A stretch of DNA of 64,000 nucleotides from Selaginella moellendorffii (lineage: Eukaryota; Plantae; Lycopodiophyta): assembly GCF_000143415.4 (NCBI RefSeq), contig NW_003314334.1, positions 261,816-325,815 on the forward strand. Reading direction: 5' to 3'. Shown here one piece after another: positions 950 to 49,986 of this stretch. The first letter of the stretch is position 1, and the number at the start of each line of letters is the position of its first letter. The notes below the pieces were generated by a model. It was not told the origin of the DNA. It saw nothing but the letters and a program-made list of their open reading frames with translations, and made no database searches. The position numbers were made by a program, and so were the translations under genes.

Positions 950-979
950 AGCTGGTACTACACTTAGATGAACTGCATC

Positions 980-1990
980 AGAGGATACCAACAAAGTCAC
1001 GCTAGGAGTAATATAATTGTTGATAATCTTGGAAGAAACCTCATAAAAATGTTAAACCATCAAAAGATAAATGTGCACTTGGATTATCACATAGTGTACC
1101 ATTTTGTGTTCCGCATCCACATAATATTGGATTGTTGCAATGGAAATCATCTCCTGGTGCACTGCAACAAGCCACTTTATAAGTTTTAAATCCATATTGA
1201 TCCATATTTCATAAGCTCAGTGCGTGCAGAGAACCAATCAAAATAGTATAGTTCAATATCATCGTTCTGATTTTTAATATCATTCACGATATCCAAAATA
1301 GCTTAATAATATTTGTAAGCTCAATAACATATTGCATACCCCCAATATCAACAAATTCTTGTAAATAGCCACGAGAACAATCTTGACGAGGAAGATTCAT
1401 CACCAGAAAATGTTTGGCACCAGAATTATATAAATCCATAATACTAGATTTAATGCCAGCCACCACAGATGGAATTGATATTTTCCATATTGCATACCAT
1501 AATTAGGATTATTACCAATATAATAAAGTGCTTTATCTTTATGAAGTTGTAATATTGTTTATGTCATAGAAAACCTGAAACTTGCGTAGATAAAACATGA
1601 GAACAGAAGTATTATAATACTAGTTGGACGAACAGTCACTCCAAATTCAGGCCCATAAAATAAGTTCCATTGTAAGTCAAGCTAGGACGCTCAAAATCTC
1701 CAAGCTTGAGAGAACAAGCTAAATAATCAATACAAATATATCCATCCCCTGTCGTTTTTTTCCAAGTGTCACTCAATATGGCAAATTTCCAGAGAGACTA
1801 AAAGCGCCAGCAGCAATTGCTTCAAGGTTGCGGTTGCCAGTATCAGAGAGTGAATCAGTAAAGCTAAAGATTGCTGAGGAACACAAGTGCCATTGAATTT
1901 TTTAGCATTATCACCACCTTTGAATCAAGGAGAATTGAAAAGAATGAACGGAAAGCCATGGAAAAAACAAAAAAGACTTGATGAAAACAA
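980..1990 (-). pseudogene. GDSL esterase/lipase pseudogene (module Y1)
   Basis: Reverse complement of 45651-46620. Encodes AIFSFTDSLSDTGN (block I, GDSL-like) and SSIMDLYNSGAKHFLVMNLP. Contains stops and frameshifts; AT-rich. Confidence 0.8.
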
Positions 1991-2199
1991 TGACCTTATA
2001 TACGCAAGAGTGTGGTGTCATTTTTATCTGAAATGTTGATATTTTTGTGGGAATAATCTTTAAAATATATTTTTCTTTCTATACTAGTAACATAGGATTA
2101 ATTCTCTTGTTTTTCCCATGTCAGCCTTTCTACATTCCAAATGCTACAAAATGACCACTATCCGCTAGCTAGAAAAGTTACTTGTACGATGATGATCAT

Positions 2200-3624
2200 G
2201 TCAGTGTTACCGGTTCATAAGTGTGGATAACAATACATATGCTCCTCCCTGCTCTGGATTCATCCTGAATACCATTTTTGCAGCACGGCCCCCGTTCTGT
2301 AAGACTCTATGGCTGGCCCAAGCAAGCTAGTCCACTCCAAAACATCTGGAAAATATGGCAGGTTTGCAATGGCCTCATTGAGATGCCCTGACCGGCCCAA
2401 CAGATCCACAAAGCATCGATTGGCTCCATTCCATAGTCTGCTACCACTGAAGCAAAGGCACTACCTTCCTCGCCTCACATTTCCAGTATGGCTGCAAGCC
2501 ACCAGACCCAAAACAAAGCACGTCAAGTCCGGGAGGTGTGTCTTTAGAGAACCAAACAGTTCCAATGCCTCAAATGAGCTAGGGCTACCAGCATCCCGGC
2601 ATATGAAACCATGTCAGGCACGGGAATCAGGGCCAGCAGCTTCAAATCTCTGCCCAGATGCCCATTACCGGCATATGCTGTCAGCACAGTATTCCACGTG
2701 GCAGATTCGTGTTGGGGGAGACTTACAAACATTCTTATGGCCTTGGCCAGATGCCCATGCTGAGAATATGCCGAGAGCATTGTGTTGAAGGATAGGAGGC
2801 CTTGCTCTGGCACGGGGTTGAAGTGGTGCTGTATCTCCTCGATTCTGTACGCCACACTCTTGCTTTTCAAGAGCAGCATTGTGGTCCATGACACAAGATC
2901 CCTCTGTGGCATTTTCTCAAACACGCACGTTGACTGCTCTATGCAACTGTTGGCTGGCATATGCCGCAAGCATTGACAATGTCCCTAAAAACATGGTTGT
3001 TGTGCTTCTCTCTTCTAGGAAGTTTGTAGATTCCTCTACACGACCGGCACGGGCATACGCTGCCAGCATGCCATTCCACGTCGCCACATTCCGCAAAGGA
3101 ATACTGCCAAACAGCTGCTGGGAGAGATCCAGCCGTCCATTCTCGGAGCAGCCATGTCTCTCTCCGGCATTTGCTCAAAGACCCCAACCGCAGCCTCTAC
3201 CTCTCCACACTGGGCAGTGGGCATACACACTGATCTGATCATTGTTGTGTCGCTCACCTCGTTTCTAGCGGGCATTTCCTCGAACATCTTCACTCACTCT
3301 TGCATATGCCCAGTCCGGGCATATCCCGCCAAGAGCACATTCCAAGGCATGACGCTCTTGTGGGGCAAAGATTCTCTGGGCTTCCTCCAAAACCCCGTTC
3401 AGTACGTAGGCATTGAGCAGGAGACCCCAGGAGAAGGAATCTTTTCTGGGGAGCGAGTCAAACACGCGGCGGGCATTAGAGACAGTAGAGCACCTCCCGT
3501 ACATCTGGATGAGCTTGTTGCAAAGGAAGATATCGCCGCTAGTGATGGATTGGATCCTGGAGTGAGCTTGGAGAGCTTGAGATGGAGTTGCACAGCATTG
3601 GATGAGCTCCAAGCACCCAGTCAT
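2200..3624 (-). pseudogene. PLS-class pentatricopeptide repeat (PPR) pseudogene (Y1)
   Basis: DIFLCNKLIQMYGRC..ARRVFDSLPRKDSFSW, VFEKMPQRDLVSWTTML and SFNTMLSAYSQHGH motifs lie in several frames, so the gene is frameshifted. Confidence 0.85.
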
Positions 3625-3642
3625 TCTTTCATTCTTTGTGAG

Positions 3643-3653
3643 TTTAGGGTTTT
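3643..3653. promoter_or_regulatory. Telo-box (AAACCCTAA) in the 40-nt spacer between the divergent PPR and PRMT7 starts
   Basis: tttagggtttt lies between ATG 3624(-) and ATG 3665(+); it is also present in the other two Y copies. Confidence 0.4.
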
Positions 3654-3664
3654 AGAAGGAAGCA

Positions 3665-5991
3665 ATGCTCCAGCAGCGGGTGAATGCGCTCACGGGGGAG
3701 AGCGAATGGATTCTCGTTGGCGATGGAGGCGACGGCGGCGATGCGAGCGATCCCCTGGCAGAGAGCTCGTATCTTGACATGCTGAATGATCGCGCCAGGA
3801 ACAGGGCATTCTCTTCAGCAATCGCGAAGGTCGGCCGCCATGGCCATGTCCTGGACATTGGGTGAGGCTAGAGAGATCCTTCTTTCGTTTCCTGAGCTCG
3901 TTCTTGACAGTGCTGGCACTGGGCTCTTGTCGCTCATGGCTTGGCGGGCAATGGAAGAGCAGTGCCAGGTGACTGCTTGCGAATCTTTTCTTCCAATGTA
4001 CAAGCTGGCTCGCAAAGTTTGCCGAGACAATGGGACGATGGGAGCGATCAAGCTGCTCCATATGGGCTCGGATGAGATCAAAGTCGGGGTGGACATCTCT
4101 AGCAAAGCCGATGCATTGGTACGCTAAGTCTGTACACATTCTTCTTCTTCGTTTCCTCTGGACTCTTTGTCTCTCCAGGTGTGTGAGATTTTAGACTCGG
4201 AGTTGCTTGGAGAAGGGATCATTCCAAGTCTAAGGAACGCTCATGAGCATTTACTCCGGCCTAATGCTGCCACAGTGCCATATCGAGCTACTGTGTATGC
4301 CCAGGTATATAGCAAAGTCTTTTTTCTTAGCTCAGTGTTGAGTTTACTTCTTTCTCTTAGCTAGTCGAGAGCGACTTTCTCTGGAGATTGCACGACCTTC
4401 AAGGGGTAGAAGACCAGCTGCAGGACGGATTGGCTTTCGCTCCCAATGATTTCTACTCTTACTTCAAGCACAGACAGCATGCGTTTCACGTTGATGAAAT
4501 CCCCGGTATGAAGCTGGTAATTTAGTAGAGTTCTCTTACAAGTTACCAAAACCCGTGGCGCTGCAGCTTTCCGAGCCGTTTGAGGCCTTCGTTCTTGACT
4601 TCTATAGAGCTCCAGATGTGCGTGGAGAATTTAATCAAGCCGTGCATGTCAACTTCTCTGGGACTGCTCACGCAATAGTTTCATGGTACGAAACTTGCTC
4701 GGATTCGCTACTTCTTGGTTCGCTTTCTTCTCTGCTTGAACTTGACAAGGTGGGTGCTGCAGCTTGACAAAGATGGCCTGGTTTGCTACTCAACTGCTCC
4801 TCGTTGGATCAGAGGTTTGTTTTCCTGTTCGATTCTTTGAGTAACTCCGCAGATTTGTGTTCTCAGGGGCAAGCGAGTGGTGTGACCATTGGAAACAATG
4901 TGTGTGGTTTCTTCCTGGACAAGGTGTTTCGGTGGAGGAGCAGTCGGAGCTTCGCGTCGTAGTCAGCCATGATGAAGCGTCAGTGCGGTATGACATCAAT
5001 GGTGGTGTATGCTGTAATAGTTCAGCGTCTGGTTTCGAGCTGAGCCTACAAAGGTGTCGCATGCTTGGTGACGGTAGCAGGCGTTCTATCATACAGTCTG
5101 CCATTCAGAAAGCTGTAAGTGTGTTTTGAATCTGTGAGTACGATTGTTTCTTTTTCTTTCTGTCCAGCTTGGAGAACGAGAACTTGGAAACTGTCTCATT
5201 CGGGATGACGGCCTGATGAGCGCCGTGTGTGCTCTATCTACAGCGCATGGATCCTGCCATGTGGCTGGCTTGTTTCCAGGCTGTAGAAGAGATGGCTTGA
5301 AGTACTTGGAGAGCGTCGCGAGCAAGCTGTCTATTATACACAAAGACGGCAAGCATCTCACTGGGGACGATTTCAAGGGGCATAAAGTATACAGTCTTGC
5401 AACTCCATTGGATATGGACGGGTTTCTTTCTTTTCGCGACAGGTGGATGTTCTTCTAGGGGAGCCTTATTACGCCACGTACGAGCATGCGTTGCCGTGGA
5501 AGCAGCTTCGGTTTTGGTTCGTTTTCGTTTCGTTTTCTAAAGAGTTGGAAGTTGTTTTAAAGCAGTGAGAATCCAGGTACGAGAGAACGACGCTAAGTCC
5601 GTTGCTATCAGAGAACCCTATTATAGTTCCCTGCTTTGGAATTCTCTATGGGATGGCTTGTCATCTTCCTGTAAGTTGATTATTTTCTCTGCAGTGACTT
5701 TGGTTTCATGTTGGCTAAATCAGGATTTGTGGCAAAGCCGCTGTCGCCTTGAAGAAGTCGATGGCTTTGATCACAGGTCATTGACAAAACCGTTTTCGCT
5801 GCTCGAGTTCAACATGCGTCAGGAAGAGTCTAAGTGGATTTGCAAAGGTTATTCAATTCTGTCCTCTTTGGTACCACTTAATGTTTTCTGCTACTTTTGC
5901 ACAGGTTAGCGTTGTAAAGACTGGGCTCTGCCATGGAGTTGTCCTGTGGATGGACTGGGTGATGGATCCCGAGAACAAGGATTTGGTACTT
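3665..5991 (+). pseudogene. PRMT7: Protein arginine N-methyltransferase 7, copy 1 (3'-truncated)
   Basis: Multi-exon with short GT-AG introns. Motifs: NALTGESEW, SYLDMLND..RN, VLDIG|AGTGLLSLMA (motif I), CEILDSELLGEG, WCDHWKQCVWF. A 5-nt deletion near 5820 relative to copy 2; the gene breaks at 5991, where it joins module X. Confidence 0.85.
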
Positions 5992-6206
5992 AGCAATCCA
6001 ACACACCTCAAATTGGGAACAAGCAAAGCTTTTGATTGCAAGGTATGCATACAATGCCTCTCTATAGTGGAGTCTCTGAAGTTTCTAGATCTATAGTAGA
6101 TTTGAGAGCCTAGGATTGTTTACTTCAGTCTTGAGAACAATGGATTATAGCAAGCAGCCTTATTCATTCATAATAGTAATGCCCATAACTAGTTTCAGCA
6201 ACTAGA

Positions 6207-7045
6207 CTAGACAGGCAGAGCGATACCCCCTGCAGCGCAGAGATCAGCTCCGGTGTTGCGATCGTAGAGACTGCAGCCCTCTTTCATGTCCTCGCAGCTG
6301 CGGCGTGCATTCCTGCAAGACTGCAGGGTGGTGCCCTGAAAAGTTACAGACTTGGCACAAATGGACACTCTGGGCAGGCAAACGAGGGCGCAAACCCCCA
6401 TGGGGTCTTCAGTAGGCAGGCAGGTGCTGTTTGCGGATGGATTCTCCAAGTAGATGCAACCGGATTTCCCGAAGCAGCAACCACAGTTATCTTTGGAGAC
6501 CTCGGCATTGCAGACCTCCACAATCGAATCAAGCTTACACTTCCTTCCTGCCATGAGCTCTATCGGAGAGGGCTGAGCTTCCTGAACATAATGAACAAGG
6601 CGGTTACCTTGATCTGTGCCCTGCTGCTCCAGCCGCGGGATGGGGTCACCGTTAACGATGTTGTAGTAACCGCATCCAGGTTGTCGGGGTGGGAGTTTTC
6701 CCTTGAGCACCTTGATGCCTGATGTTGGGAATCCTGATGAAGGCAATGGGCATACGGCCAACTTCGGACCTTGGCACTCCCGGGTACAAGCCCTTGAATC
6801 ACCGCCAATGCAAGTGACTTGTCCTGAACCAGGTTGCAGATAGACACAACCTTTCTTCAGACTACAGCAGTTGCTGCAATCGGTATAGGTGAGGTCACCA
6901 TTGCAAACCTCGACGACACCACCTTGAGCAGCTGCAAGAACAGGAGTCCGAGTTAGAATCGAACATACAAGTGGAGATCTCTCTCACAGGATAACGAGGC
7001 CAACAGAAGAAGAACGAGCACGGGGAGATTGCCGCTTCCAGCCAT
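6207..7045 (-). CDS. Secreted multi-domain Pin-II (potato type II, I20)-like protease inhibitor, copy 1 (260 aa, 2 exons)
   Basis: Signal peptide MAGSGNLPVLVLLLLASLS, a 56-nt phase-1 intron, then CSNCC-x4-GC...ACTREC..VCP, CGCC-x4-GC...CALVC..IC and a third partial Cys repeat. Reading frame intact. Confidence 0.75.
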
Positions 7046-7152
7046 ACTTCTCTATTGCAGATCTGATGGGCTTTTGAAGTCCAGCATTGGTGCTTTAGAA
7101 ATGTTCAAAACGTGTGTCCTTGACACAATGGATATCTTAATGCAGTAAGATA

Positions 7153-7262
7153 AGCCCTCTCACCACGGATGTGACGGGCGAGCTGAATGTCCTTTGGCAA
7201 TGCCAAAGGACATCTAATGCCAAATTGGCATTAGATAGTGGCTTGCTTTGCGAAGATTCACC
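7153..7262 (-). pseudogene. Histone H3 C-terminal relic carrying a palindromic insertion
   Basis: Encodes PKDIQLARHIRGERA. The cleaner copy is at 48944-49020. Confidence 0.7.
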
Positions 7263-7699
7263 GGTAAAATGCGGGAACAATGCCCAGTCTCAGCACAAAA
7301 ACAAATATCAGCTCCAGTGTTGCAAACGTAGAGATTGCAGCCCTTGATAGAATGAGCGGACCGAAGCTGGAGAGCCTAGGCCTGAAAAACGATCAGGCAC
7401 GGTTGCAAGGGTGCAGGGTAACAAGTTGCATACGGTGGCAATTTATTTTGGAAAAATGCTCGTCTCGACCATTTTGATTTTTTATATTCATTTTCTGTTG
7501 TCACATATATTGTCTGTATTGAAAACATATATGCCACTAGCAACCCTTGTACCAGGGGTGCTACCCCGATCGATTTTTTGCTCTTAGGTAGGGAAAGCTG
7601 GATTACTCCTGTGTTGAGAGCTCATAAAATAGAGTAAATGGCAGCATCTGTTAGAACTAAGCTGAACATGCACACAACCAAGGCAGGTAGCTCACTGGT

Positions 7700-8260
7700 A
7701 GAGCACCTGGCACCGGTGTAGGAGGTCCTGCCTGTCCAGCCATTTTCCAACGGCATCCATCCCTCCAGCTGGCTGAAAGTTTGGATCCCAGGACCATTTT
7801 GCACTAACAATGCAAACTTTAATTGAACCAGGCCATGGGGAAGAGTCAACCATTGAACCCAAGCATGATCAATAACAAGGACTCGACGCAAAGAGTTTCT
7901 TCAATTCTCATATTGGTGTTGGTACAGTGGTTCACATTGAGTTGGTAGCTTCCCAGACAACTTGTTTGGTTGCTGCTAAAGTTCCTTGATGGAACACTGC
8001 CTTCAAACCTGTTGTTGGTCGCATTGGAGCTGAAATTTTTGGAAGGCTCACCCGAGAAGATGGCCTCCCAGTTTGTTGGAGTTTAACAGAAGTATGCTCG
8101 GAAAGCTGAGAGGAATGCTGCCTTGTAGGTGACTAATATCTGCCGAATCTCAGGAGAGCTGAACAAGCTAGAAGCAGTTAGAGAGTTCCTAATCCCTGCA
8201 AGCTGGAATAGTTGGTTTATGAATATCTATCAAATCCATCAAATCCAATGCACCTTCACT
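7700..8260 (-). pseudogene. Degenerate leucine-rich-repeat (LRR-RLK/RLP-like) relic (X1)
   Basis: Fragments LSNC..LVQL, LQGSIPLSF, LLLNSNKLGG and NNRFEGSVP, with many stops. Confidence 0.45.
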
Positions 8261-8477
8261 GAAAATGTCAACACAGTGAGCCATTTCCTCCAAACACAGT
8301 AGGTGTAATGGGACCAATGTCGTACTTGGCACTGTCCATAAACCATGGCTACAACAAAATAGCAATCGTTGGCATTGCTTTGGCTTGTACATGTGATCTG
8401 AAATATGTCCTGCCAGCCCACGAGAGAACGAGCTTTTTAAATGCTTGAAAACGTTTACTGTTTGGAACGTACATAGG

Positions 8478-9130
8478 ATGAAGTTATCGCCTCTGACGGT
8501 GAATCCAAAGCCCTCTCTCCAGATTGTCGCGAGTTTTACAAGTTCCCAGCAAGACACAACCTCACTGGCTGGACGAATCCAGAGCATGGCCCGTGGTGAT
8601 TCGGCCTCTTTTGTTTTGCGTGGTTTACTCCCAAAGCCGGAGATCAACTTTCATGCTGGGATGCTGGCCGGTGTAACCTTGGGGACGGTGTCTGGTGACG
8701 AGTTATTGCAGGGGCCGAGCCTGACCGAATCAACTGGTAAGCTAGAAGTTTTTTTCGTATTTACGTATTCGCTGACTGATACTTTATTCCAGCGGCTTCG
8801 ACATGGTCCGTAGCCAACGCCACGGCATTTGGACAGTGGATACAGAGCAGAGGCTCCATCTCTCCCGTTGCATCCGGCTACGTCATCTCCGGCCCGACCA
8901 CAGCTCTACGAGCCGAGGTTGTTCATGTTTCCATGGAGGAGGAATGGCCGAGGACGCTCCAGAACGGTCTCGTAGCACACTTCGGCTCCTCCAAGGCTCG
9001 AGACAGGAGATGCAAGGGATGCGTCTGGGTGGGAATGGCTTGTGTGACAACGCCGGTAGTAGCAGCAGTGTGGGCACAGGAAAGCCAGGGAGCAGCAGCG
9101 GCATCAAGCTGCAAATCCGCTACGTTCTAG
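8478..9130 (+). CDS. Unknown two-exon protein (~198 aa), X1
   Basis: Removing the 56-nt GT-AG intron 8737-8792 (GCTGAC branch point) joins ORF 8445-8813 in frame to ORF 8933-9130. No family recognised; may be a relic of a longer gene. Confidence 0.4.
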
Positions 9131-9671
9131 AGCAACTTGGAGCGGAATTTTATGGCCTCTCGTGGCTGACCATCAGTCCCATGTATCTCCACCGGCATCC
9201 AGTGCTGCCTTACCACTGCGGCGTAGTGCTGCGGCTGGAGAAGCTACTGGATTACCCGGAGGCACCACCACCGCCGCCGCCGCCGCCGCCGTTATGATTA
9301 TGTACATACGATGTTTAAAACGACAGTATAAATATACGTATTCTTATTAAGCAAAGGGAAGATTAAAAAAAAAAGAGTTTAGCCTTTGTTCATTAACCAT
9401 CTCTTCTTTGTTGAGCATACAATGGCGGACTCAAGGGGCTCTTTTCCAGACGTATCACGCTAAACCGGTTAAAGACCGATCGATGCTTAACCTCACAACA
9501 ATGCACAGCCATATTTCTTGCTGATATCGGTTCTAAGCCAAGGCGCATTGGCCAATGTCGCATTGCTGGATTCCTACCACTTTCGATGAAACTGCATTCT
9601 CTCTCGATCAGCCAAAACACCAAGCTATCTTTTAAAATAAAATAATAGAAATTATAAGAACTAAATTTCAG

Positions 9672-10020
9672 AGGATACCCAACAAAGTCACGCTAGGAGT
9701 AATATAATTGTTGATAATCTTGGAAGAAACCTCATAAAAATGTTAAACCATCAAAAGATAAATGTGCACTTGGATTATCACATAGTGTACCATTTTGTGT
9801 TCCGCATCCACATAATATTGGATTGTTGCAATGGAAATCATCTCCTGGTGCACTGCAACAAGCCACTTTATAAGTTTTAAATCCATATTGATCCATATTT
9901 CATAAGCTCAGTGCGTGCAGAGAACCAATCAAAATAGTATAGTTCAATATCATCGTTCTGATTTTTAATATCATTCACGATATCCAAAATAGCTTAATAA
10001 TATTTGTAAGCTCAATAACA
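9672..10020 (-). pseudogene. GDSL lipase 3' fragment (Y2)
   Basis: Near-identical to 980-1330; a deletion fuses it directly to the PPR remnant. Confidence 0.7.
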
Positions 10021-11120
10021 TAGTCTGCTACCACTGAAGCAAAGGCACTACCTTCCTCGCCTCACATTTCCAGTATGGCTGCAAGCCACCAGACCCAAAA
10101 CAAAGCACGTCAAGTCCGGGAGGTGGAGTGTCTTTAGAGAACCAAACAGTTCCAATGCCTCAAATGAGCTAGGGCTACCAGCATCCCGGCATATGAAACC
10201 ATGTCAGGCACGGGAATCAGGGCCAGCAGCTTCAAATCTCTGCCCAGATGCCCATTACCGGCATATGCTGTCAGCACAGTATTCCACGTGGCAGATTCGT
10301 GTTGGGGGAGACTTACAAACATTCTTATGGCCTTGGTCAGATGCCCATGCTGAGAATATGCCGAGAGCATTGTGTTGAAGGATAGGAGGCCTTGCTCTGG
10401 CACGGGGTTGAAGTTGTGCTGTATCTCCTCGATTCCGTACGCCACACTTGCTTTTCAAGAGCAGCATTGTGGTCCATGACACAAGATCCCTCTGTGGCAT
10501 TTTCTCAAACACGCACGTTGACTGCTCTATGCAACTGTGACTGGCATATGCCGCAAACATTGAGTTCCAGGAGACAATGTCCCTAAAAACATGGTTGTTG
10601 TGCATGAAACCAGGCTTCTTTCTGGCATCTCTTCTAGGAAGTTTGTAGATTCCTCTACACGACCGGCACGGGCATACGCTGCCAGCATGCCATTCCACGT
10701 CGCCACATCAAAGGAATACTGCCAAACAGCTGCTGGGAGAGATCCAGCCGTCCATTCTCGGAGCATGCCGCAGACTCGAACATCTTGACGCACTCTTGCA
10801 TATGCCCAGTCCGGGCATATCCCGCCAAGGGCACATTCCAAGGCATGACGCTCTTGTGGGGCAAAGATTCTCTGGGCTTCCTCCAAAACCCCGTTCAGTA
10901 CGTAGGCATTGAGCAGGAGATCCCAGGAGAAGGAATCTTTTCTGGGGAGCGAGTCAAACACGCGGCGGGCATTAGAGACAGTAGAGCACCTCCCGTACAT
11001 CTGGATGAGCTTGTTGCAAAGGAAGATATCGCCGCTAGTGATGGATTGGATCCTGGAGTGAGCTTGGAGAGCTTGAGATGGAGTTGCACAGCATTGGATG
11101 AGCTCCAAGCACCCAGTCAT
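10021..11120 (-). pseudogene. PLS-class PPR pseudogene (Y2)
   Basis: Paralogue of 2200-3624 with different indels; frameshifted. Confidence 0.85.
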
Positions 11121-11160
11121 TCTTTCATTCTTTGTGAGTTTAGGGTTTTAGAAGGAAGCA

Positions 11161-13661
11161 ATGCTCCAGCAGCGGGTGAATGCGCTCACGGGGGAGAGCG
11201 AATGGATTCTCGTTGGCGATGGAGGCGACGGCGGCGATGCGAGCGATCCCCTGGCAGAGAGCTCGTATCTTGACATGCTGAATGATCGCGCCAGGAACAG
11301 GGCATTCTCTTCAGCAATCGCGAAGGTCGGCCGCCATGGCCATGTCCTGGACATTGGGTGAGGCTAGAGAGATCCTTCTTTCGTTTCCTGAGCTCGTTCT
11401 TGACAGTGCTCATGGCTTGGCGGGCAATGGAAGAGCAGTGCCAGGTGACTGCTTGCGAATCTTTTCTTCCAATGTACAAGCTGGCTCGCAAAGTTTGCCG
11501 AGACAATGGGACGATGGGAGCGATCAAGCTGCTCCATATGCGCTCGGATGAGATCAAAGTCGGGGTGGACATCTCTAGCAAAGCCGATGCATTGGTACGC
11601 TAAGTCTGTACACATTCTTCTTCTTCGTTTCCTCTGGACTCTTTGTCTCTCCAGGTGTGTGAGATTTTAGACTCGGAGTTGCTTGGAGAAGGGATCATTC
11701 CAAGTCCAAGGCACGCTCATGAGCATTTACTCCGGCCTAATGCTGCCACAGTGCCATATCGAGCTACTGTGTATGCCCAGGTATATAGCAAAGTCTTTTT
11801 TCTTAGCTCAGTGTTGAGTTTACTTCTTTCTCTTAGCTAGTCGAGAGCGACTTTCTCTGGAGATTGCACGACCTTCAAGGGGTAGAAGACCAGCTGCAGG
11901 ACGGATTGGCTTTCGCTCCCAATGATTTCTACTCTTACTTCAAGCACAGACAGCATGCGTTTCACGTTGATGAAATCCCCGGTATGAAGCTGGTAATTTA
12001 GTAGAGTTCTCTTACAAGTTACCAAAACCCGTGGCGCTGCAGCTTTCCGAGCCGTTTGAGGCCTTCGTTCTTGACTTCTATAGAGCTCCAGATGTGCGTG
12101 GAGAATTTAATCAAGCCGTGCATGTCAACTTCTCTGGGACTGCTCACGCAATAGTTTCATGGTACGAAACTTGCTCGGATTCGCTACTTCTTGGTTCGCT
12201 TTCTTCTCTGCTTGAACTTGACAAGGTGGGTGCTGCAGCTTGACAAAGATGGCCTGGTTTGCTACTCAACTGCTCCTCGTTGGATCAGAGGTTTGTTTTC
12301 CTGTTCGATTCTTTGAGTAACTCCGCAGATTTGTGTTCTCAGGGGCAAGCGAGTGGTGTGACCATTGGAAACAATGTGTGTGGTTTCTTCCTGGACAAGG
12401 TGTTTCGGTGGAGGAGCAGTCGGAGCTTCGCGTCGTAGTCAGCCATGATGAAGCGTCAGTGCGGTATGACATCAATGGTGGTGTATGCTGTAATAGTTCA
12501 GCGTCTGGTTTCGAGCTGAGCCTACAAAGGTGTCGCATGCTTGGTGACGGTAGCAGGCGTTCTATCATACAGTCTGCCATTCAGAAAGCTGTAAGTGTGT
12601 TTTGAATCTGTGAGTACGATTGTTTCTTTTTCTTTCTGTCCAGCTTGGAGAACGAGAATTTGGAAACTGTCTCATTCGGGATGACGGCCTGATGAGCGCC
12701 GTGTGTGCTCTATCTACAGCGCATGGATCCTGCCATGTGGCTGGCTTGTTTCCAGGCTGTAGAAGAGATGGCTTGAAGTACTTGGAGAGCGTCGCGAGCA
12801 AGCTGTCTATTATACACAAAGACGTCAAGCATCTCACTGGGGACGATTTCAAGGGGCATAAAGTATACAGTCTTGCAACTCCATTGGATATTGACGGGTT
12901 TCTTTCTTTTCGCGACAGGTGGATGTTCTTCTAGGGGACCCTTATTACGCCACGTACGAGCATGCGTTGCCGTGGAAGCAGCTTCGGTTTTGGTTCGTTT
13001 TCGTTTCGTTTTCTAAAGAGTTGGAAGTTGTTTTAAAGCAGTGAGAATCCAGGTACGAGAGAACGACGCTAAGTCCGTTGCTATCAGAGAACCCTATTAT
13101 AGTTCCCTGCTTTGGAATTCTCTATGGGATGGCTTGTCATCTTCCTGTAAGTTGATTATTTTCTCTGCAGTGACTTTGGTTTCATGTTGGCTAAATCAGG
13201 ATTTGTGGCAAAGCCGCTGTCGCCTTGAAGAAGTCGATGGCTTTGATCACAGGTCATTGACAAAACCGTTTTCGCTGCTCGAGTTCAACATGCGTGAGGA
13301 ATTCAAGAGTCTAAGTGGATTTGCAAAGGTTATTCAATTCTGTCCTCTTTGGTACCACTTAATGTTTTCTGCTACTTTTGCACAGGTTAGCGTTGTAAAG
13401 ACTGGGCTCTGCCATGGAGTTGTCCTGTGGATGGACTGGGTGATGGATCCCGAGAACAAGGATTTGGTACTTTCAACGGGACTTTTAAATCCAAGTGAGT
13501 AAGATTCTCTCCATCTCATCTCAAGGAGTTTCGTTTTACGTCTAGGCTGGAAGCAGGGCGTCAAGCTTTTCCGAAAGCCACTGCAAGCCACGGAGACTTT
13601 AGAGCTCAACGCGTCCTTCGATTCACAGACTGGAGAGATCAGCATCACTCGCGTGGTCTGA
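11161..13661 (+). pseudogene. PRMT7: PRMT7 copy 2 (full length, motif I deleted)
   Basis: The only copy with the last exon (GWKQGVKLFRKP...FDSQTGEISITRVV*). A 20-nt deletion at ~11410 removes most of GTGLLS in SAM-binding motif I and shifts the frame. Confidence 0.85.
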
Positions 13662-13746
13662 AGCCACAAACTCTTCTTTGCATTTAGGAAAACTTTTAAA
13701 CCAACATCAGGTAAATTCCAAACATATAGTTCCTATCTCTTGTGCT

Positions 13747-14470
13747 TCAAGTTCTTTGTTTGTTCGTCCTTGAAGTGTTGTTGAGCCTGAAGTAACCAGC
13801 GTCATACCGGATGCTCTTGATGTACGGTAACTTCCGCCACCTCGCAGTTGCTGAATTATACACCACCAAAATCTTGTTCTCTTCCTGTTGCTTTTCATCA
13901 AGTCCTTCCTCGTTTGGCATTTTCTCTCCTCTTGCTCCGGAGCCATGCTCTTCTCTCCAGGCTGGTCTTCCTCCCACTCCTCTTCGTCTTCCTCGTCATC
14001 GTCATCGTCATAAGGCAGAGCTCCAGCACCACCACTCGATCCACAACATTACACGCCCGGAATCCATATCCGCTCCCATCGCCCAAAAACTTCTTGGGCA
14101 CATCCACGATCCAGCACTTTGTCGGCCCGAGAATGGCTGCGCTGCGATCAAAGTGCCAGAAGTCGAGAATCTTGCGCCGCACAGCACAAACTGGTGGTGG
14201 TCACTGTCGTCAACCAGAGGCCACTCGATCCCTTTCTGGGAGAAGAAGGAGCCGGCATCCACTTGCCCGACTCCCAGACGCCGCGCAGCGCGTCGTGATC
14301 CCGGCACGACTCGACGACGCTCACGTCCGACTCCTTCCATGCGCTGTTAGCTCCGCGAGTCGAAAGCTTGGACCTGGACGATGCTCTGGAGGAGATTTTG
14401 CTGCTGCATGGCGGACACCATGTGACCGTAGCGGAGATAATCACTCGATTGCTGGCCTAAGTTCATGGAG
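13747..14470 (-). pseudogene. Degenerate gene, possibly F-box-associated/kelch type
   Basis: GC-rich coding-like sequence with an acidic tract and the motif ILVVYNSATARWRKLP; no continuous frame. Confidence 0.25.
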
Positions 14471-14674
14471 TAGCGAACGATCTTGAAGTCCCCACTCGAA
14501 GAACACGCAGCGCCAGCAGTAGCCGTTTCACCACGTGCCACGTGTTGGTTACCCCAGCGAACCAGGCCCTTTTGAGCGGCGCGACATTGTCAACCGGAAA
14601 GGTGGCGGCCCAAGAGTTATGGCACGATGACTTTATCTTAGAAAAGGTAGATTTAGATATGGAATGTTCTAAAC

Positions 14675-16914: not shown

Positions 16915-16974
16915 TTATAAAAGCAAAGTTACAAAGAACTTTGAATATTTTAAGTGGTTTGTGGGGGATATGGA

Positions 16975-17335
16975 ATGAGAAGATGCTTTCACACTGAGAT
17001 TGAGACTGCAAATGCTTTCACACTGTTCCCAGGGATGGACGTGGTTAAGTTCCTGGCATTATAGAAATCTCATGAAAACAAAGTTAAAACAACTTTGAAT
17101 GTTTTCATTCATCATAAATTGTTTATATGGTTTACTAGTGCCCGCCACGAAGCATGAGATGAGACTACAGATGCTTTCACGGATGGACGTGGTTAAGTTC
17201 CTGGCATATGAAAATCTTATAAAAGAAAAGTTACAAACAACTTTGAATATTTTCAGTGGGCATACGGAAAGACAAGATGCTTTCACCCTGTTCCCAGGCT
17301 GCTTGAAGGGATGGACGTGGTTAAGTTCCTGACGC
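16975..17335. repeat. Degenerate tandem repeat, ~130-150-bp unit, three copies
   Basis: gatggacgtggttaagttcctg at ~17033, 17182 and 17310, each preceded by a (g/a)atgctttcac motif. Confidence 0.7.
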
Positions 17336-18230
17336 ATTGTTCTTGTTCTAGAAAAAATGTATTCGACTCTTTTGTACTATGGCTGATTGATTGGACCATA
17401 ATTCAATACAAGACAGCCTATTGTCATTCACACTTTAATGTTTTGACAAACACATGGACTTGGGTGATTTGTAAATTTTTGCAGTGGGTGAAGTTGGGTG
17501 AACTTGATCCACTAGAAGTTGGGTGAAGTGAATTTGGGTGGTGAAGTTCACCATTGCACTTACAAGCATCAAGTCTCAAGGTTCTCTTTCACGCTGGTGT
17601 TGTTCTTCCACAGGAAGTATAGGTTCTTCGACACTAGCAAATTCTAGCCCACATCTTCTCCAACACAATCCTCTACTCCAATTATGTCAGGAGGAGCCAG
17701 AGGAAGTGGACTTCCACAATGATGAAGTATTTTATGCTTAACAGGTTTAGTGATCCAGATGCACACTTGCAAACTTTCTTTATTTCTAAGATAAATAATG
17801 AGAATTCAGATGTGGAGCGGTTGTGGTTACAACAGAGGATGGAGCAGCCGAGTGGCTAGGCATAGTAGAACAAAACACCATTCACAGATTGACCAACCCT
17901 AAGAGTGGCTTTTCTCAATCGCCAGCTCCTCTAGTCATATTAAGTATTATTGTCAAGGATTGCCATTAGAGATAGAATCTCACATGAAAATTCAGAATCC
18001 AGCGCCTTTGGAGGAAGCAATCCAACACACCTCAAATTGGGAACAAGCAAAGCTTTTGATTGCAAGGTATGCATACAATGCCTCTCTATAGTGGAGTCTC
18101 TGAAGTTTCTAGATCTATAGTAGATTTGAGAGCCTAGGATTGTTTACTTCAGTCTTGAGAACAATGGATTATAGCAAGCAGCCTTATTCATTCATAATAG
18201 TAATGCCCATAACTAGTTTCAGCAACTAGA

Positions 18231-19069
18231 CTAGACAGGCAGAGCGATACCCCCTGCAGCGCAGAGATCAGCTCCGGTGTTGCGATCGTAGAGACTGCAG
18301 CCCTCTTTCATGTCCTCGCAGCTGCGGCGTGCATTCCTGCAAGACTGCAGGGTGGTGCCCTGAAAAGTTACAGACTTGGCACAAATGGACACTCTGGGCA
18401 GGCAAACGAGGGCGCAAACCCCCATGGGGTCTTCAGTAGGCAGGCAGGTGCTGTTTGCGGATGGATTCTCCAAGTAGATGCAACCGGATTTCCCGAAGCA
18501 GCAACCACAGTTATCTTTGGAGACCTCGGCATTGCAGACCTCCACAATCGAATCAAGCTTACACTTCCTTCCTGCCATGAGCTCTATCGGAGAGGGCTGA
18601 GCTTCCTGAACATAATGAACAAGGCGGTTACCTTGATCTGTGCCCTGCTGCTCCAGCCGCGGGATGGGGTCACCGTTAACGATGTTGTAGTAACCGCATC
18701 CAGGTTGTCGGGGTGGGAGTTTTCCCTTGAGCACCTTGATGCCTGATGTTGGGAATCCTGATGAAGGCAATGGGCATACGGCCAACTTCGGACCTTGGCA
18801 CTCCCGGGTACAAGCCCTTGAATCACCGCCAATGCAAGTGACTTGTCCTGAACCAGGTTGCAGATAGACACAACCTTTCTTCAGACTACAGCAGTTGCTG
18901 CAATCGGTATAGGTGAGGTCACCATTGCAAACCTCGACGACACCACCTTGAGCAGCTGCAAGAACAGGAGTCCGAGTTAGAATCGAACATACAAGTGGAG
19001 ATCTCTCTCACAGGATAACGAGGCCAACAGAAGAAGAACGAGCACGGGGAGATTGCCGCTTCCAGCCAT
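18231..19069 (-). CDS. Pin-II-like protease inhibitor, copy 2 (260 aa)
   Basis: Matches copy 1 (CTREC/CALVC loops). Confidence 0.75.
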
Positions 19070-19237
19070 ACTTCTCTATTGCAGATCTGATGGGCTTTTG
19101 AAGTCCAGCATTGGTGCTTTAGAAATGTTCAAAACGTGTGTCCTTGACACAATGGATATCTTAATGCAGTAAGATAAGCCCTCTCACCACGGATGTGACG
19201 GGCGAGCTGAATGTCCTTTGGCAATGCCAAAGGACAT

Positions 19238-20133
19238 CTAATGCCAAATTGGCATTAGATAGTGGCTTGCTTTGCGAAGATTCACCGGTAAAATGCGGGA
19301 ACAATGCCCAGTCTCAGCACAAAAACAAATATCAGCTCCAGTGTTGCAAACGTAGAGATTGCAGCCCTCTTTCATGTCCTCGCAGCTGCGGCGTGCATTC
19401 CTGCAAGACTGCAGGGTGGTGCCCTGAAAAGTTACAGACTTGGCACAAATGGACACTCTGGGCAGGCAAACGAGGGCGCAAACCCCCATGGGGTCTTCAG
19501 TAGGCAGGCAGGTGCTGTTTGCGGATGGATTCTCCAAGTAGATGCAACCGGATTTCCCGAAGCAGCAACCACAGTTATCTTTGGAGACCTCGGCATTGCA
19601 GACCTCCACAATCGAATCAAGCTTACACTTCCTTCCTGCCATGAGCTCTATCGGAGAGGGCTGAGCTTCCTGAACATAATGAACAAGGCGGTTACCTTGA
19701 TCTGTGCCCTGCTGCTCCAGCCGCGGGATGGGGTCACCGTTAACGATGTTGTAGTAACCGCATCCAGGTTGTCGGGGTGGGAGTTTTCCCTTGAGCACCT
19801 TGATGCCTGATGTTGGGAATCCTGATGAAGGCAATGGGCATACGGCCAACTTCGGACCTTGGCACTCCCGGGTACAAGCCCTTGAATCACCGCCAATGCA
19901 AGTGACTTGTCCTGAACCAGGTTGCAGATAGACACAACCTTTCTTCAGACTACAGCAGTTGCTGCAATCGGTATAGGTGAGGTCACCATTGCAAACCTCG
20001 ACGACACCACCTTGAGCAGCTGCAAGAACAGGAGTCCGAGTTAGAATCGAACATACAAGTGGAGATCTCTCTCACAGGATAACGAGGCCAACAGAAGAAG
20101 AACGAGCACGGGGAGATTGCCGCTTCCAGCCAT
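19238..20133 (-). CDS. Pin-II-like protease inhibitor, copy 3, chimeric C-terminus (279 aa)
   Basis: 1064-bp tandem duplicate of copy 2. After EDMKEGC it reads NLYVCNTGADICFCAETGHCSRILPVNLRKASHYLMPIWH*. Confidence 0.65.
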
Positions 20134-21350: not shown

Positions 21351-21565
21351 AAATGTCAACACAGTGAGCCATTTCCTCCAAACACAGTAGGTGTAATGGG
21401 ACCAATGTCGTACTTGGCACTGTCCATAAACCATGGCTACAACAAAATAGCAATCGTTGGCATTGCTTTGGCTTGTACATGTGATCTGAAATATGTCCTG
21501 CCAGCCCACGAGAGAACGAGCTTTTTAAATGCTTGAAAACGTTTACTGTTTGGAACGTACATAGG

Positions 21566-24705: not shown

Positions 24706-24717
24706 TAAGTCCAAATA

Positions 24718-40806: not shown

Positions 40807-41645
40807 ATGGCTGGAAGCGGCAATCTCCCCGTGCTCGTTCTTCTTCTGTTGGCCTCGTTATCCTGTGAGAGAGATCTCCACTTGTATGTTCGATTCTAAC
40901 TCGGACTCCTGTTCTTGCAGCTGCTCAAGGTGGTGTCGTCGAGGTTTGCAATGGTGACCTCACCTATACCGATTGCAGCAACTGCTGTAGTCTGAAGAAA
41001 GGTTGTGTCTATCTGCAACCTGGTTCAGGACAAGTCACTTGCATTGGCGGTGATTCAAGGGCTTGTACCCGGGAGTGCCAAGGTCCGAAGTTGGCCGTAT
41101 GCCCATTGCCTTCATCAGGATTCCCAACATCAGGCATCAAGGTGCTCAAGGGAAAACTCCCACCCCGACAACCTGGATGCGGTTACTACAACATCGTTAA
41201 CGGTGACCCCATCCCGCGGCTGGAGCAGCAGGGCACAGATCAAGGTAACCGCCTTGTTCATTATGTTCAGGAAGCTCAGCCCTCTCCGATAGAGCTCATG
41301 GCAGGAAGGAAGTGTAAGCTTGATTCGATTGTGGAGGTCTGCAATGCCGAGGTCTCCAAAGATAACTGTGGTTGCTGCTTCGGGAAATCCGGTTGCATCT
41401 ACTTGGAGAATCCATCCGCAAACAGCACCTGCCTGCCTACTGAAGACCCCATGGGGGTTTGCGCCCTCGTTTGCCTGCCCAGAGTGTCCATTTGTGCCAA
41501 GTCTGTAACTTTTCAGGGCACCACCCTGCAGTCTTGCAGGAATGCACGCCGCAGCTGCGAGGACATGAAAGAGGGCTGCAGTCTCTACGATCGCAACACC
41601 GGAGCTGATCTCTGCGCTGCAGGGGGTATCGCTCTGCCTGTCTAG
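40807..41645 (+). CDS. Pin-II-like protease inhibitor, copy 4 (260 aa; intron 40865-40920)
   Basis: Exon 1 (58 nt) + exon 2 (725 nt) = 261 codons. P1 Arg codon CGG at 41070-41072. Confidence 0.78.
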
Positions 41646-49142: not shown

Positions 49143-49986
49143 ATGGCTGGAAGCGGCAATCTCCCCGTGCTCGTTCTTCTTCTGTTGGCCTCGTTATCCT
49201 GTGAGAGAGATCTCCACTTATATGTTACAGTCGATTCTAACTCGGACTCCTGTTCTTGCAGCTGCTCAAGGTGGCGTCGTCGAGGTTTGCTATGGTGACC
49301 TCACCTATACCGATTGCAGCAACTGCTGTAGTCTGAAGAAAGGTTGTGTCTACCTGCAACCTGGTTCAGGACAAGTCACTTGCATTGGCGGTGATTCAAG
49401 GGCTTGTACCCTGGAGTGCCAAGGTCCGAAGTTGGCCGTATGCCCATTGCCTTCATCAGGATTCCCAACATCAGGCATCAAGGTGCTCAAGGGAAAACTC
49501 CCACCCCGACAACCTGGATGCAGTTACTACAACATCGTTAACGGTGACCCCATCCCGCGGCTGGAGCAGCAGGGCACAGATCAAGGTAACCGCCTTGTTC
49601 ATTATGTTCAGGAAGCTCAGGCCTCTCCGATAGAACTCATGGCAGGAAGGAAGTGTAAGCTTGATTCGATTGTGGAGGTCTGCAATGCCGAGGTCTCCAA
49701 AGATAATTGTGGTTGCTGCTTCGGGAAATCCGGTTGCATCTACTTGGAGAATCCATCCGCAAACAGCACCTGCCTGCCTACTGAAGACCCCATGGGGGTT
49801 TGCCCCCTCGTTTGCGTGCCCACAGTGTCCATTTGTACCAAGTCTGTAACTTTTCAGGGCACCACCCTGCAGTCTTGCAGGAATGCACGCCGCAGCTGCG
49901 AGGACATGAAAGAGGGCTGCAGTCTCTACGATCGCAACACTGGAGCTGATCTCTGCGCTGCAGGGGGTATCGCACTGCCTGTCTAG
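49143..49986 (+). CDS. Pin-II-like protease inhibitor, copy 5, diverged (260 aa; intron 49201-49261)
   Basis: Loops CTLEC (CTG at 49411-49413) and CPLVC; reading frame intact. Confidence 0.78.

What the first reader, a model, noticed from the sequence alone, without database searches (positions are those of the whole stretch)
6207..7045. Multi-domain Pin-II-like inhibitor with unusual permuted architecture, amplified five times
Seen: a signal-peptide exon and phase-1 intron, then Cys blocks in the order L1(CSNCC..GC..C)-H1(CTREC..CP)-~70-aa linker-L2(CGCC..GC..C)-H2(CALVC..C)-L3(partial). Known: Pin-II genes have an intron near the end of the signal peptide; ancestral single-domain forms put the reactive-loop half first; multi-domain permuted precursors are best known from Solanaceae. 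Here the precursor begins and ends with an L half and has an extra EVC cysteine before each domain. Inference: an independent origin of a multi-domain Pin-II. It is the only recognisable host gene kept intact in every module copy, which suggests it drives the amplification.
Basis: partly seen in the sequence, partly recalled or inferred. Interest (0 to 1): 0.75.

Follow-up and report, generated by a model that had tools for sequence, protein, structure and literature searches.

The report
Spikemoss Pin-II protease inhibitor gene cluster
Five near-identical copies of a secreted, cysteine-rich gene in the spikemoss Selaginella moellendorffii are divergent members of the potato type II protease-inhibitor family; the family was already reported in this plant, but this branch is still labelled "uncharacterized".

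Summary
On the minus strand, 7045-6207 is a gene with a signal-peptide exon, a 56-nt phase-1 GT-AG intron and a 240-codon exon with 24 Cys in the stated block order. Five copies lie in the window. Three are identical, one differs by 8 residues, and one has a chimeric 3' end.

The organism is Selaginella moellendorffii, and the spliced product equals SELMODRAFT_446573. Kinship to Pin-II (MEROPS I20) is supported. Domain 1 matches solved Nicotiana and tomato inhibitors (E 3.6e-5, all 8 Cys aligned). A 46%-identical paralogue passes Pfam PF02428 (49 bits), while the window protein itself does not (16.1 against 22.3). Paralogues vary mostly at the C-x-P1-x-C reactive loops.

Two-domain Pin-II proteins of Selaginella were published in 2014, but those four gene models belong to the other subfamily.

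The architecture is less odd than claimed. The protein is a tandem duplication of a ~95-aa unit (E 1.4e-13). Part of the "linker" is a decayed half-domain, and the C-terminal tail is a true half-domain.

That the gene "drives the amplification" is untested. The scan noted a similar array elsewhere in this genome (s1-334556).

Verdict: a new member of a known kind, of modest interest.

The parts
6988..7045 (-). Copy A exon 1: Met plus a hydrophobic signal peptide (19 codons + 1 nt)
   Evidence: identical to the N-terminus of P0001
6932..6987 (-). Copy A intron 1: 56 nt, GT...AG, phase 1, split codon T|CT (Ser)
   Evidence: the position and phase match the conserved Pin-II gene structure described in PMC2259423
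6207..6931 (-). Copy A exon 2: the mature 240-aa protein with 24 Cys, stop at 6209-6207
   Evidence: 100% identical to P0001
6903..6917 (-). VVEVC (Cys 9): conserved extra cysteine before domain 1, proposed as the last Cys of a vestigial reactive-loop fragment
   Evidence: invariant in both subfamilies; predicted beta-strand; the reading as a vestige is inference
6810..6878 (-). Domain 1 H-fragment: CSNCC-x5-C-x11-C (5 Cys)
   Evidence: aligned to Pin-II structures 1fyb, 1tih and 1oyv; Pfam PF02428 profile positions 26-51
6750..6788 (-). Domain 1 L-fragment: reactive loop C-T-R-E-C (P1 Arg) -x7-C
   Evidence: aligned to the reactive loops of 1tih (CPRNC) and 1oyv (CTREC); variants in paralogues are CTLEC and CPRNC
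6636..6680 (-). PGCGYYNIVNGDPIP in the 'linker': a decayed copy of the tail H-fragment, with 1 Cys left
   Evidence: hhalign unit 1 against unit 2, E 1.4e-13, pairs it with EGCSLYDRNTGADL; repeat unit 2 against repeat unit 4, E 3.1e-5
6548..6607 (-). Optional in-frame intron 2 in the inter-unit linker: GT at 6607, AG ending at 6560 (48 nt) or 6548 (60 nt)
   Evidence: database isoforms of 244 and 240 aa lack exactly these 16 or 20 residues; GT...AG borders; pLDDT 24-33 here; the segment is absent from the sister subfamily
6510..6539 (-). C-KLDSIVEV-C (Cys 131, Cys 140): proposed vestigial reactive-loop fragment that lacks its first Cys
   Evidence: both Cys are invariant in both subfamilies; the C-x8-C spacing equals that of the canonical fragment; hhalign gave no support, so this is inference only
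6420..6485 (-). Domain 2 H-fragment: C-G-CC-x5-C-x11-C
   Evidence: homologous to the domain 1 H-fragment; weak match to 2jzm
6357..6392 (-). Domain 2 L-fragment: reactive loop C-A-L-V-C (P1 Leu) -x6-C
   Evidence: the most variable stretch among paralogues (CPLVC, CPRIC, CVQVC)
6237..6317 (-).
   Evidence: in paralogue P0004 the domain 2 L-fragment plus the tail match PF02428 profile positions 1-49; hhalign H1 against the tail, E 0.0036; aligned to angiosperm single-repeat inhibitors in PMC4189545
7301..7393 (-). Decayed relic of an inhibitor 3' end (contains a stop codon), about 250 bp upstream of copy A; similar relics at 20389-20481(-), 40516-40551(+) and 48840-48902(+)
   Evidence: tblastn; translation
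18231..19069 (-). Copy B, identical to A
19238..20133 (-). Copy C: made by a 1064-bp tandem duplication; chimeric C-terminus, exon 2 of 259 codons with 27 Cys
   Evidence: equals SELMODRAFT_425261 (P0015)
40807..41645 (+). Copy D, identical to A, in the inverted arm
49143..49986 (+). Copy E: 8 amino-acid changes, including CTREC to CTLEC and CALVC to CPLVC; intron 1 is 61 nt
   Evidence: equals LOC9649242 isoforms

Best explanation
[quoted passage not shown] They form a subfamily so divergent that Pfam's threshold misses it.

The mature protein is a tandem duplication of a ~95-residue unit. Each unit holds one complete 8-cysteine Pin-II domain in the permuted order: the body (H) fragment first, then the reactive-loop (L) fragment. 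This is the order of the processed Nicotiana domains and of tomato inhibitor-II domain II. After each complete domain comes a further H-fragment. In unit 1 it has decayed to one Cys. In unit 2 it keeps 4 Cys.

The two exposed loops, C-T-R-E-C (P1 Arg, trypsin-like targets) and C-A-L-V-C (P1 Leu, chymotrypsin- or elastase-like targets), would bind protease active sites in the standard substrate-like way.

What is shown here: the gene model, the copies, homology to Pin-II, the internal duplication, and variation concentrated at the loops.

What is inferred: inhibitory activity, the specificities, the disulfide map, and that the extra VEVC and KC cysteines are remains of L-fragments that clasp the tail as in tomato inhibitor-II.

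The copies most likely arose by recent unequal crossing-over and segmental (including inverted) duplication. Gene conversion may be keeping three of them identical. Any selective benefit from dosage or diversification is conjecture.
For: Homology to Pin-II:
- Domain 1 alone against solved structures gives 1fyb E 3.6e-5, 1oyv 0.0033 and 1tih 0.0037, with all 8 Cys in register.
- Family profiles give 1fyb at E 5.4e-5 and 3.8e-6. Every hit at E below 0.1, and all but one of the ten at E up to 1, is a Pin-II inhibitor.
- Paralogue P0004 scores 49 bits on PF02428 (cut-off 22.3). It is related to the window protein at E 5e-16 across 1.84 billion representatives.

Fold:
- The two best Foldseek hits of the AF2 model are tomato inhibitor-II.
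- VIA aligns model residues 12-63 to 1pju_C residues 17-76 at Z 5.0, rmsd 3.6 A, 35% identity.

Gene structure:
- A phase-1 GT-AG intron lies in the signal peptide, as in all Pin-II genes surveyed in PMC2259423.

Internal duplication:
- hhalign E 1.4e-13 over 90 columns.

Reactive loops:
- Domain 1 variants are CTREC, CTLEC and CPRNC. Domain 2 variants are CALVC, CPLVC, CPRIC and CVQVC. The sister subfamily varies at the same columns.
- Five of the 8 A-versus-E replacements fall in the 26 residues of the two loop fragments (P 6e-4, a post hoc test).
- Overall pN/pS is 0.41.

All 24 Cys are invariant across both subfamilies.
Against: - The window protein itself fails Pfam's gathering score (16.1 against 22.3 bits).
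- Domain 2 alone has no significant match to any solved inhibitor (best E 0.21).
- The AF2 models are of low confidence. The whole protein has pLDDT 49.5. Unit 2 alone has pLDDT 39 and is unusable.
- No coordinates were available, so no disulfide was mapped.
- No expression or activity data were seen. The only hint of transcription is the set of database isoforms.
- The sample for pN/pS is 14 substitutions.
- No relative outside S. moellendorffii was found, so conservation cannot be judged beyond one species.
Confidence: 0.8

Rival explanations
1. The proteins descend from Pin-II but no longer act as protease inhibitors. They could be, for example, antimicrobial or signalling cysteine-rich peptides released by processing.
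For: - The extra cysteines and decayed half-domains depart from the canonical inhibitors.
- Pfam scores the window protein below threshold.
- A variable, possibly spliced or cleaved inter-unit linker exists.
Against: - Both complete domains keep the 8-Cys frame and a C-x-P1-x-C loop with the classic P1 residues Arg and Leu.
- Paralogue loops (CPRNC, CTREC) are identical to those of proven Nicotiana and tomato inhibitors.
- Variation is concentrated at the loops, which is the signature of inhibitors in an arms race.
Confidence: 0.1
2. Some of the five copies are assembly artefacts. They could be two haplotypes, or collapsed repeats joined wrongly into direct and inverted copies, so the true copy number at this locus is lower.
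For: - A, B and D are 100% identical over at least 1 kb, and the arms are 98-100% identical.
- The arrangement is partly palindromic.
- An N gap (850-949) sits just before the first module.
- From my own knowledge, the published S. moellendorffii assembly holds both haplotypes.
Against: - No N run lies between the copies.
- The modules have separate histories. Only module 2 has the 4543-bp stretch at 13473-18015.
- Copy C has a distinct 1064-bp tandem junction. Copy E is 2-4% diverged.
- The same subfamily sits on at least three other scaffolds, so amplification is real at the genome level.
Confidence: 0.15
3. The resemblance to Pin-II is convergent: an unrelated cysteine-rich fold that happens to share cysteine spacing.
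For: Cys-rich sequences inflate similarity scores. Spurious haemagglutinin and other hits appear at E about 0.01-0.1.
Against: - Non-cysteine residues also match (N-CC, KGC-Y, G..C.G, AC.R.C, CP).
- P0004 passes the curated Pfam cut-off by 27 bits.
- The intron position and phase are the same as in the family.
- The top structural hits are Pin-II.
Confidence: 0.03

Closest known systems
SmPinII-1 to -4 of Selaginella moellendorffii (gene models 438273, 438274, 438284, 444521; Santamaria et al. 2014, PMC4189545)
   Same: Same species and same overall layout: a signal peptide, 24 Cys, two units, and a tail half-domain. They are about 40-46% identical to the window protein. Their reactive loops are hypervariable too.
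   Different: They form a separate subfamily that passes Pfam (49 bits for P0004). Their inter-unit linker is shorter and lacks the optional 48/60-nt intron segment. The window subfamily (446573, 417949, 447436 and others) was not in that study and carries no family annotation.
Tomato inhibitor-II (PDB 1PJU, 1OYV), a two-repeat 'clasped' Pin-II
   Same: It is the best structural match and has an identical reactive loop, CTREC. Its central H-L domain is flanked by an N-terminal L-fragment and a C-terminal H-fragment. I propose the same order for each Selaginella unit.
   Different: In tomato the outer fragments form a second working inhibitory domain with 4 disulfides. Here the outer fragments are decayed, with 1+1 Cys in unit 1 and 2+4 in unit 2. 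The whole unit is duplicated in tandem. The pairing of the outer fragments is not shown.
Nicotiana alata NaPI multi-domain precursor and its products T1, C1 and C2 (PDB 1FYB, 1TIH, 1QH2)
   Same: It is the best sequence match (E 3.6e-5 to 3.8e-6), with the 8-Cys frame in H-then-L order. The CPRNC loop of T1 recurs in paralogue P0002.
   Different: NaPI has six near-identical repeats joined by short EEKKN-type linkers that are cleaved (linker detail from my own knowledge), and no intron between repeats. Selaginella has two diverged units, a long variable linker and a possible intron in it.
Single-repeat L-H Pin-II genes of rice, Arabidopsis and other non-solanaceous angiosperms (engineered model aPI1, PDB 1CE3)
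   Same: They share the two-exon, phase-1 gene structure. The L2-plus-tail stretch of the Selaginella proteins aligns to them end to end. The C-x-CC spacing of domain 2 matches theirs.
   Different: They have one repeat and 8 Cys, and the split codon encodes Gly. Here the split codon encodes Ser, there are four half-repeat pairs, and there are 24 Cys.

Membership tests
Pin-II / potato type II inhibitor (MEROPS I20, Pfam PF02428) | Score at or above the Pfam gathering threshold (22.3 bits) | tested here: not met
   The window protein scores 16.1 bits, copy E 16.0, and domain 1 alone 17.9. Paralogue P0004 scores 49 bits and is linked to the window protein at E 5e-16. Membership therefore rests on transitive homology.
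Pin-II / potato type II inhibitor (MEROPS I20, Pfam PF02428) | Significant sequence similarity to experimentally characterised members | tested here: met
   Domain 1 gives 1fyb E 3.6e-5, 1oyv 0.0033 and 1tih 0.0037. The family profile gives 1fyb at E 3.8e-6. Domain 2 is linked only through domain 1 (hhalign E 1.4e-13).
Pin-II / potato type II inhibitor (MEROPS I20, Pfam PF02428) | Eight-cysteine frame: C-x(1,2)-CC-x5-C-x(9-11)-C plus C-x3-C-x(6-8)-C | tested here: met
   Domain 1 has all 8 Cys aligned to 1tih and 1fyb. Domain 2 has 8 Cys with C-x1-CC spacing, as in angiosperm single-repeat members. All are invariant in 10 family members.
Pin-II / potato type II inhibitor (MEROPS I20, Pfam PF02428) | Two exons, with a phase-1 GT-AG intron inside the signal-peptide coding region and the split codon encoding Gly | tested here: met
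   The phase-1 GT-AG intron falls after codon 19 of the signal peptide, as described in PMC2259423. One departure: the split codon is Ser (T|CT), not Gly.
Pin-II / potato type II inhibitor (MEROPS I20, Pfam PF02428) | Exposed reactive loop C-P2-P1-P1'-C that is hypervariable among paralogues | tested here: met
   Domain 1 variants are CTREC, CTLEC and CPRNC. Domain 2 variants are CALVC, CPLVC, CPRIC and CVQVC. The sister subfamily varies at the same columns. Exposure of the loop was not tested.
Pin-II / potato type II inhibitor (MEROPS I20, Pfam PF02428) | Pin-II fold (three-stranded sheet) with the four canonical disulfides | tested here: inconclusive
   In the AF2 model unit 1 has pLDDT 63-74 and the whole protein 49.5. 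The top Foldseek hits are 1pju and 1oyv (E 0.014 and 0.14). VIA gives Z 5.0 with 51 residues aligned. Unit 2 could not be modelled. No coordinates were available for disulfide distances.
Pin-II / potato type II inhibitor (MEROPS I20, Pfam PF02428) | Inhibition of serine proteases | not testable with these tools
   This needs recombinant protein and enzyme assays.
Circularly permuted ('bracelet' or clasped) multi-repeat Pin-II precursors, Solanaceae type | A series of L-H sequence repeats in which each H pairs with the next L, and the terminal L and H fragments clasp | tested here: inconclusive
   L1 plus the decayed H-fragment, and L2 plus the tail, are L-H repeats. H1-L1 models as a contiguous domain. 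The identity of the VEVC and KC-x8-C segments as L-fragments, and any clasping, rest only on Cys spacing and parity. hhalign gave no support.

The most novel reading that the evidence does not exclude
The Selaginella proteins may be a natural snapshot of circular permutation by duplication. An ancestral reactive-loop-first (L-H) Pin-II repeat doubled to L-H-L-H. The inner H-L pair became the working domain, and the outer L and H fragments are now decaying. In unit 1 they are nearly gone. In unit 2 they are half kept and may still clasp. The whole unit then doubled again, with an intron arising in or kept at the junction.

If so, lycophytes reached a permuted multi-domain inhibitor precursor independently of Solanaceae. 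They would preserve the intermediate stages that Solanaceae (bracelet) and Capsicum (clean H-L beads) show only as end points.
Probability: 0.4. Interest if true: 0.55.

Novelty: new member of a known kind. Interest (0 to 1): 0.3.

Why it matters
- It assigns a likely function to a set of 'uncharacterized' or 'hypothetical' Selaginella loci. There are five in this window and more on at least three other scaffolds. Pfam-based annotation and the 2014 survey of plant inhibitors both missed them.
- It corrects the published description of the Selaginella Pin-II proteins as lacking canonical cysteines. Read in the permuted order, each unit holds a complete 8-Cys domain.
- If the vestigial half-domains are confirmed, the family would be a useful natural example of how tandem duplication followed by terminal decay produces circular permutation.
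- Hypervariable reactive loops together with recent local amplification fit an arms race with herbivore or pathogen proteases in a lycophyte. This is not surprising for the family.

Tried and rejected
- Whole-protein and domain 2 searches of solved structures gave influenza haemagglutinin HA1 hits (E 0.007-0.2). I reject them as chance: the alignments are patchy, no cysteine frame is shared, and they vanish with the family profile.
- P0005 (328 aa, E 8e-4) is a cysteine-poor repetitive protein. It is not related.
- Two database searches with the window protein, one with the family profile and one with P0004 found nothing outside S. moellendorffii. The protein atlas gave no usable hit.
- AF2 of unit 2 alone failed (pLDDT 39), so the pairing of the tail could not be examined. 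MAFFT would not align unit 1 rows to unit 2 in a mixed alignment.
- hhalign gave no support for the idea that KC-x8-C or VEVC are L-fragments.
- I looked for a transposon that might carry the gene. Other ORFs of the module have no Pfam match, or are PPR and PRMT fragments. The 4543-bp stretch specific to module 2 has no target-site duplication or terminal repeats. Capture by a mobile element is neither shown nor excluded.
I therefore could not read paralogue loci, other lycophytes, or angiosperm sequences by reference, and I built no domain tree.
- A 'CHTCC' motif in the PDF-derived supplement of PMC4189545 is not in the database sequences, so I did not use it.

Full report
**What is there**

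The window is from Selaginella moellendorffii. The 240-codon exon at window:6210-6929:- is 100% identical to residues 21-260 of SELMODRAFT_446573 (P0001, 260 aa).

The gene lies on the minus strand:
- Exon 1 is 7045-6988. It encodes MAGSGNLPVLVLLLLASLS plus one base.
- The intron is 6987-6932 (56 nt, GTGAGA...TTGCAG, phase 1, split codon T|CT = Ser).
- Exon 2 is 6931-6207.

I searched the exons by reference and ran no search or fold on a joined model, because the database protein P0001 already is the spliced product. One disclosure: in the local script I put the first 20 residues of P0001 in front of copy E's exon-2 translation, only to keep the alignment rows level. Nothing was searched or folded with that row.

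**The copies**

tblastn and blastn find five copies:

| Copy | Coordinates | State |
|---|---|---|
| A | 7045-6207(-) | intact |
| B | 19069-18231(-) | identical to A |
| C | 20133-19238(-) | chimeric 3' end |
| D | 40807-41645(+) | identical to A |
| E | 49143-49986(+) | 8 amino-acid changes |

- A, B and D are identical over 1001 bp.
- E has 14 coding differences from A, 8 of them replacements (pN/pS 0.41).
- C sits 1064 bp from B. It arose by a tandem duplication whose junction lies between the true 3' end and a decayed relic of an inhibitor 3' end.
- Such a relic sits about 250 bp upstream of copies A, C, D and E (7301-7393 and its equivalents).
- C therefore ends in a foreign 40-residue tail and has 27 Cys.

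The copies sit in a module of about 8.7 kb. The module is repeated directly (978-9690, then 9668-22597 with extra sequence) and in inverted orientation (50034-40514). Around and between the copies lie:
- Gypsy pieces;
- a LINE (RVT_1, Exo_endo_phos and zf-RVT domains; 32898-37418);
- PPR pseudogene pieces;
- a PRMT_C fragment.

All five copies correspond to GenBank or RefSeq models named only 'hypothetical' or 'uncharacterized'. The same subfamily occurs on at least three other scaffolds.

**Is it Pin-II?**

Evidence for:
- Domain 1 alone matches solved Pin-II inhibitors. The hits are Nicotiana alata 1fyb (E 3.6e-5), tomato inhibitor-II 1oyv (0.0033) and N. alata T1 1tih (0.0037). All eight cysteines and several other residues are in register.
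- Family profiles raise 1fyb to 5.4e-5 and then 3.8e-6. Every hit at E below 0.1, and all but one of the ten at E up to 1, is Pin-II.
- A scan of 1.84 billion representatives found one diverged relative, P0004 (46% identity, E 5e-16). It is also from S. moellendorffii and scores 49 bits on PF02428.
- The phase-1 intron in the signal peptide is the gene structure that Kong & Ranganathan 2008 found in every Pin-II gene they surveyed. In their set the split codon was Gly; here it is Ser.

Evidence that is weaker or against:
- Pfam PF02428 scores the window protein at 16.1 bits, below its 22.3 cut-off.
- The AF2 model is weak overall (pLDDT 49.5; 63-74 over most of residues 1-100). Its two best Foldseek matches among 350,542 chains are tomato inhibitor-II. 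VIA aligns model 12-63 to 1pju_C 17-76 at Z 5.0, rmsd 3.6 A, 35% identity.

I conclude that the protein is a true but divergent family member.

**Architecture**

The published nomenclature calls the reactive-loop piece (C-x3-C-x8-C, 3 Cys) the L-fragment. It calls the CxxCC..GC..C piece (5 Cys) the H-fragment.

In published terms the order is: VEVC, H1, L1, [linker], KC-x8-C (ending in VEVC), H2, L2, tail.

- Residues 6-97 align with residues 137-230 at E 1.4e-13 (hhalign on the family alignment). The protein is therefore a tandem duplication of a ~95-residue unit.
- In that alignment the linker's PGCGYYNIVNGDPI pairs with the tail's EGCSLYDRNTGADL.
- The tail is a true H-fragment, on three grounds:
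  - In P0004, L2 plus the tail match Pfam profile positions 1-49 of 51.
  - H1 aligns to the tail at E 0.0036.
  - Santamaria et al. aligned this stretch end to end with angiosperm single-repeat inhibitors.
- So each unit is H-L-H. The downstream H has decayed to one Cys in unit 1 and keeps four Cys in unit 2.

The conserved extra cysteines (Cys 9; Cys 131 and 140, spaced C-x8-C as in an L-fragment) may be remains of upstream L-fragments. That would make each unit an L-H-L-H pair like tomato inhibitor-II.

If so, canonical pairing predicts disulfides 9-86, 131-205, 140-219 and 212-231. This rests only on spacing and parity. hhalign did not support it. A tandem L-H pairing is equally parity-consistent in unit 2. 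Unit 2 could not be modelled (pLDDT 39).

**Linker intron**

Database isoforms of 244 and 240 aa lack exactly 16 or 20 residues of the linker. The missing DNA in copy A starts with GT at 6607 and ends with AG at 6560 or 6548.
- The sister subfamily lacks this segment.
- AF2 gives it pLDDT 24-33.

The gene probably has an optional second intron between the two units, unlike solanaceous genes, which have none between repeats.

**Function**

- Loop sequences differ among paralogues: CTREC, CTLEC and CPRNC in domain 1, and CALVC, CPLVC, CPRIC and CVQVC in domain 2.
- The columns with three or more states in both subfamilies cluster at these loops.
- Five of the 8 A-versus-E replacements fall in the 26 residues of the two L-fragments (binomial P 6e-4, a post hoc test).
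- All 24 cysteines are invariant.

This is the pattern expected of canonical serine-protease inhibitors that are diversifying their P1 specificity. Activity itself is inferred.

**Prior knowledge**

- Santamaria et al. 2014 (PMC4189545) reported four I20 members in S. moellendorffii. Each has two Pin-II domains, with missing canonical and extra cysteines, on a branch separate from angiosperms.
- Their gene models (438273, 438274, 438284, 444521) are all of the P0004 subfamily.
- PINIR 2021 (PMC8188708) lists Selaginella among Pin-II sources.
- No paper in the library names 446573, 417949 or 447436.

The kind is therefore known. This subfamily, its local five-fold amplification and the H-L-H reading of the unit are additions.

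**Amplification claim**

Apart from the mobile elements around and between the copies, the inhibitor is the only gene in the module that is more than a fragment. It is intact in four of five copies. Nothing here tests whether it 'drives' the amplification. The upstream relics and the 1064-bp tandem junction point to repeated unequal crossing-over in an old inhibitor array.

An assembly contribution to the copy count cannot be excluded. The differing module histories argue against it: only module 2 has the 4543-bp stretch, copy C has its own junction, and copy E is diverged.

**Limits**

- No plant genome collection or model coordinates were available.
- No tree with angiosperm domains was built.

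Noticed in passing
window 32898-40681 (-): A LINE-type ORF of 1506 aa (Exo_endo_phos, RVT_1, zf-RVT) is preceded by an overlapping 1094-aa ORF (37397-40681) with no Pfam match. That is unusually long for a LINE ORF1. The pair sits between the direct and inverted arms of the inhibitor array.
   Followed up: partly
window 22597-30681: Gypsy-type pieces are present: an integrase ORF at 22613-23083 and an RT-RNaseH-integrase zinc-finger ORF at 26965-28701. A 2.1-kb direct repeat (22597-24717 against 28541-30681, 97% identity) interrupts module 2. Earlier notes of the scan describe introns in this integrase.
   Followed up: no
window 2544-3624 (-), 10255-11120 (-), 44206-45071 (+): PPR-repeat ORFs broken across frames lie in each module copy. 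They are probably pieces of a PPR pseudogene carried along with the inhibitor gene.
   Followed up: partly
window 13041-13502 (+) and 13473-18015: An ORF with an arginine-methyltransferase C-terminal (PRMT_C) match spans the left edge of a 4543-bp stretch found only in module 2. The stretch has no target-site duplication or terminal repeats. It carries two ~360-aa ORFs (14778-15863 and 15835-16914, minus strand) without Pfam matches, and short tandem repeats around 16900-17340.
   Followed up: partly
database names of paralogues: UniRef names SELMODRAFT_446575 (copy E) '4Fe-4S ferredoxin-type domain-containing protein'. It names SELMODRAFT_438274 'Bowman-Birk serine protease inhibitors family domain-containing protein'. 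Both look like cysteine-pattern false positives.
   Followed up: no
window 57724-58229, 60029-60639, 61375-61905: A separate AT-richer repeat family (79-89% identity) lies near the right end of the window, next to an N gap at 61179-61373.
   Followed up: no
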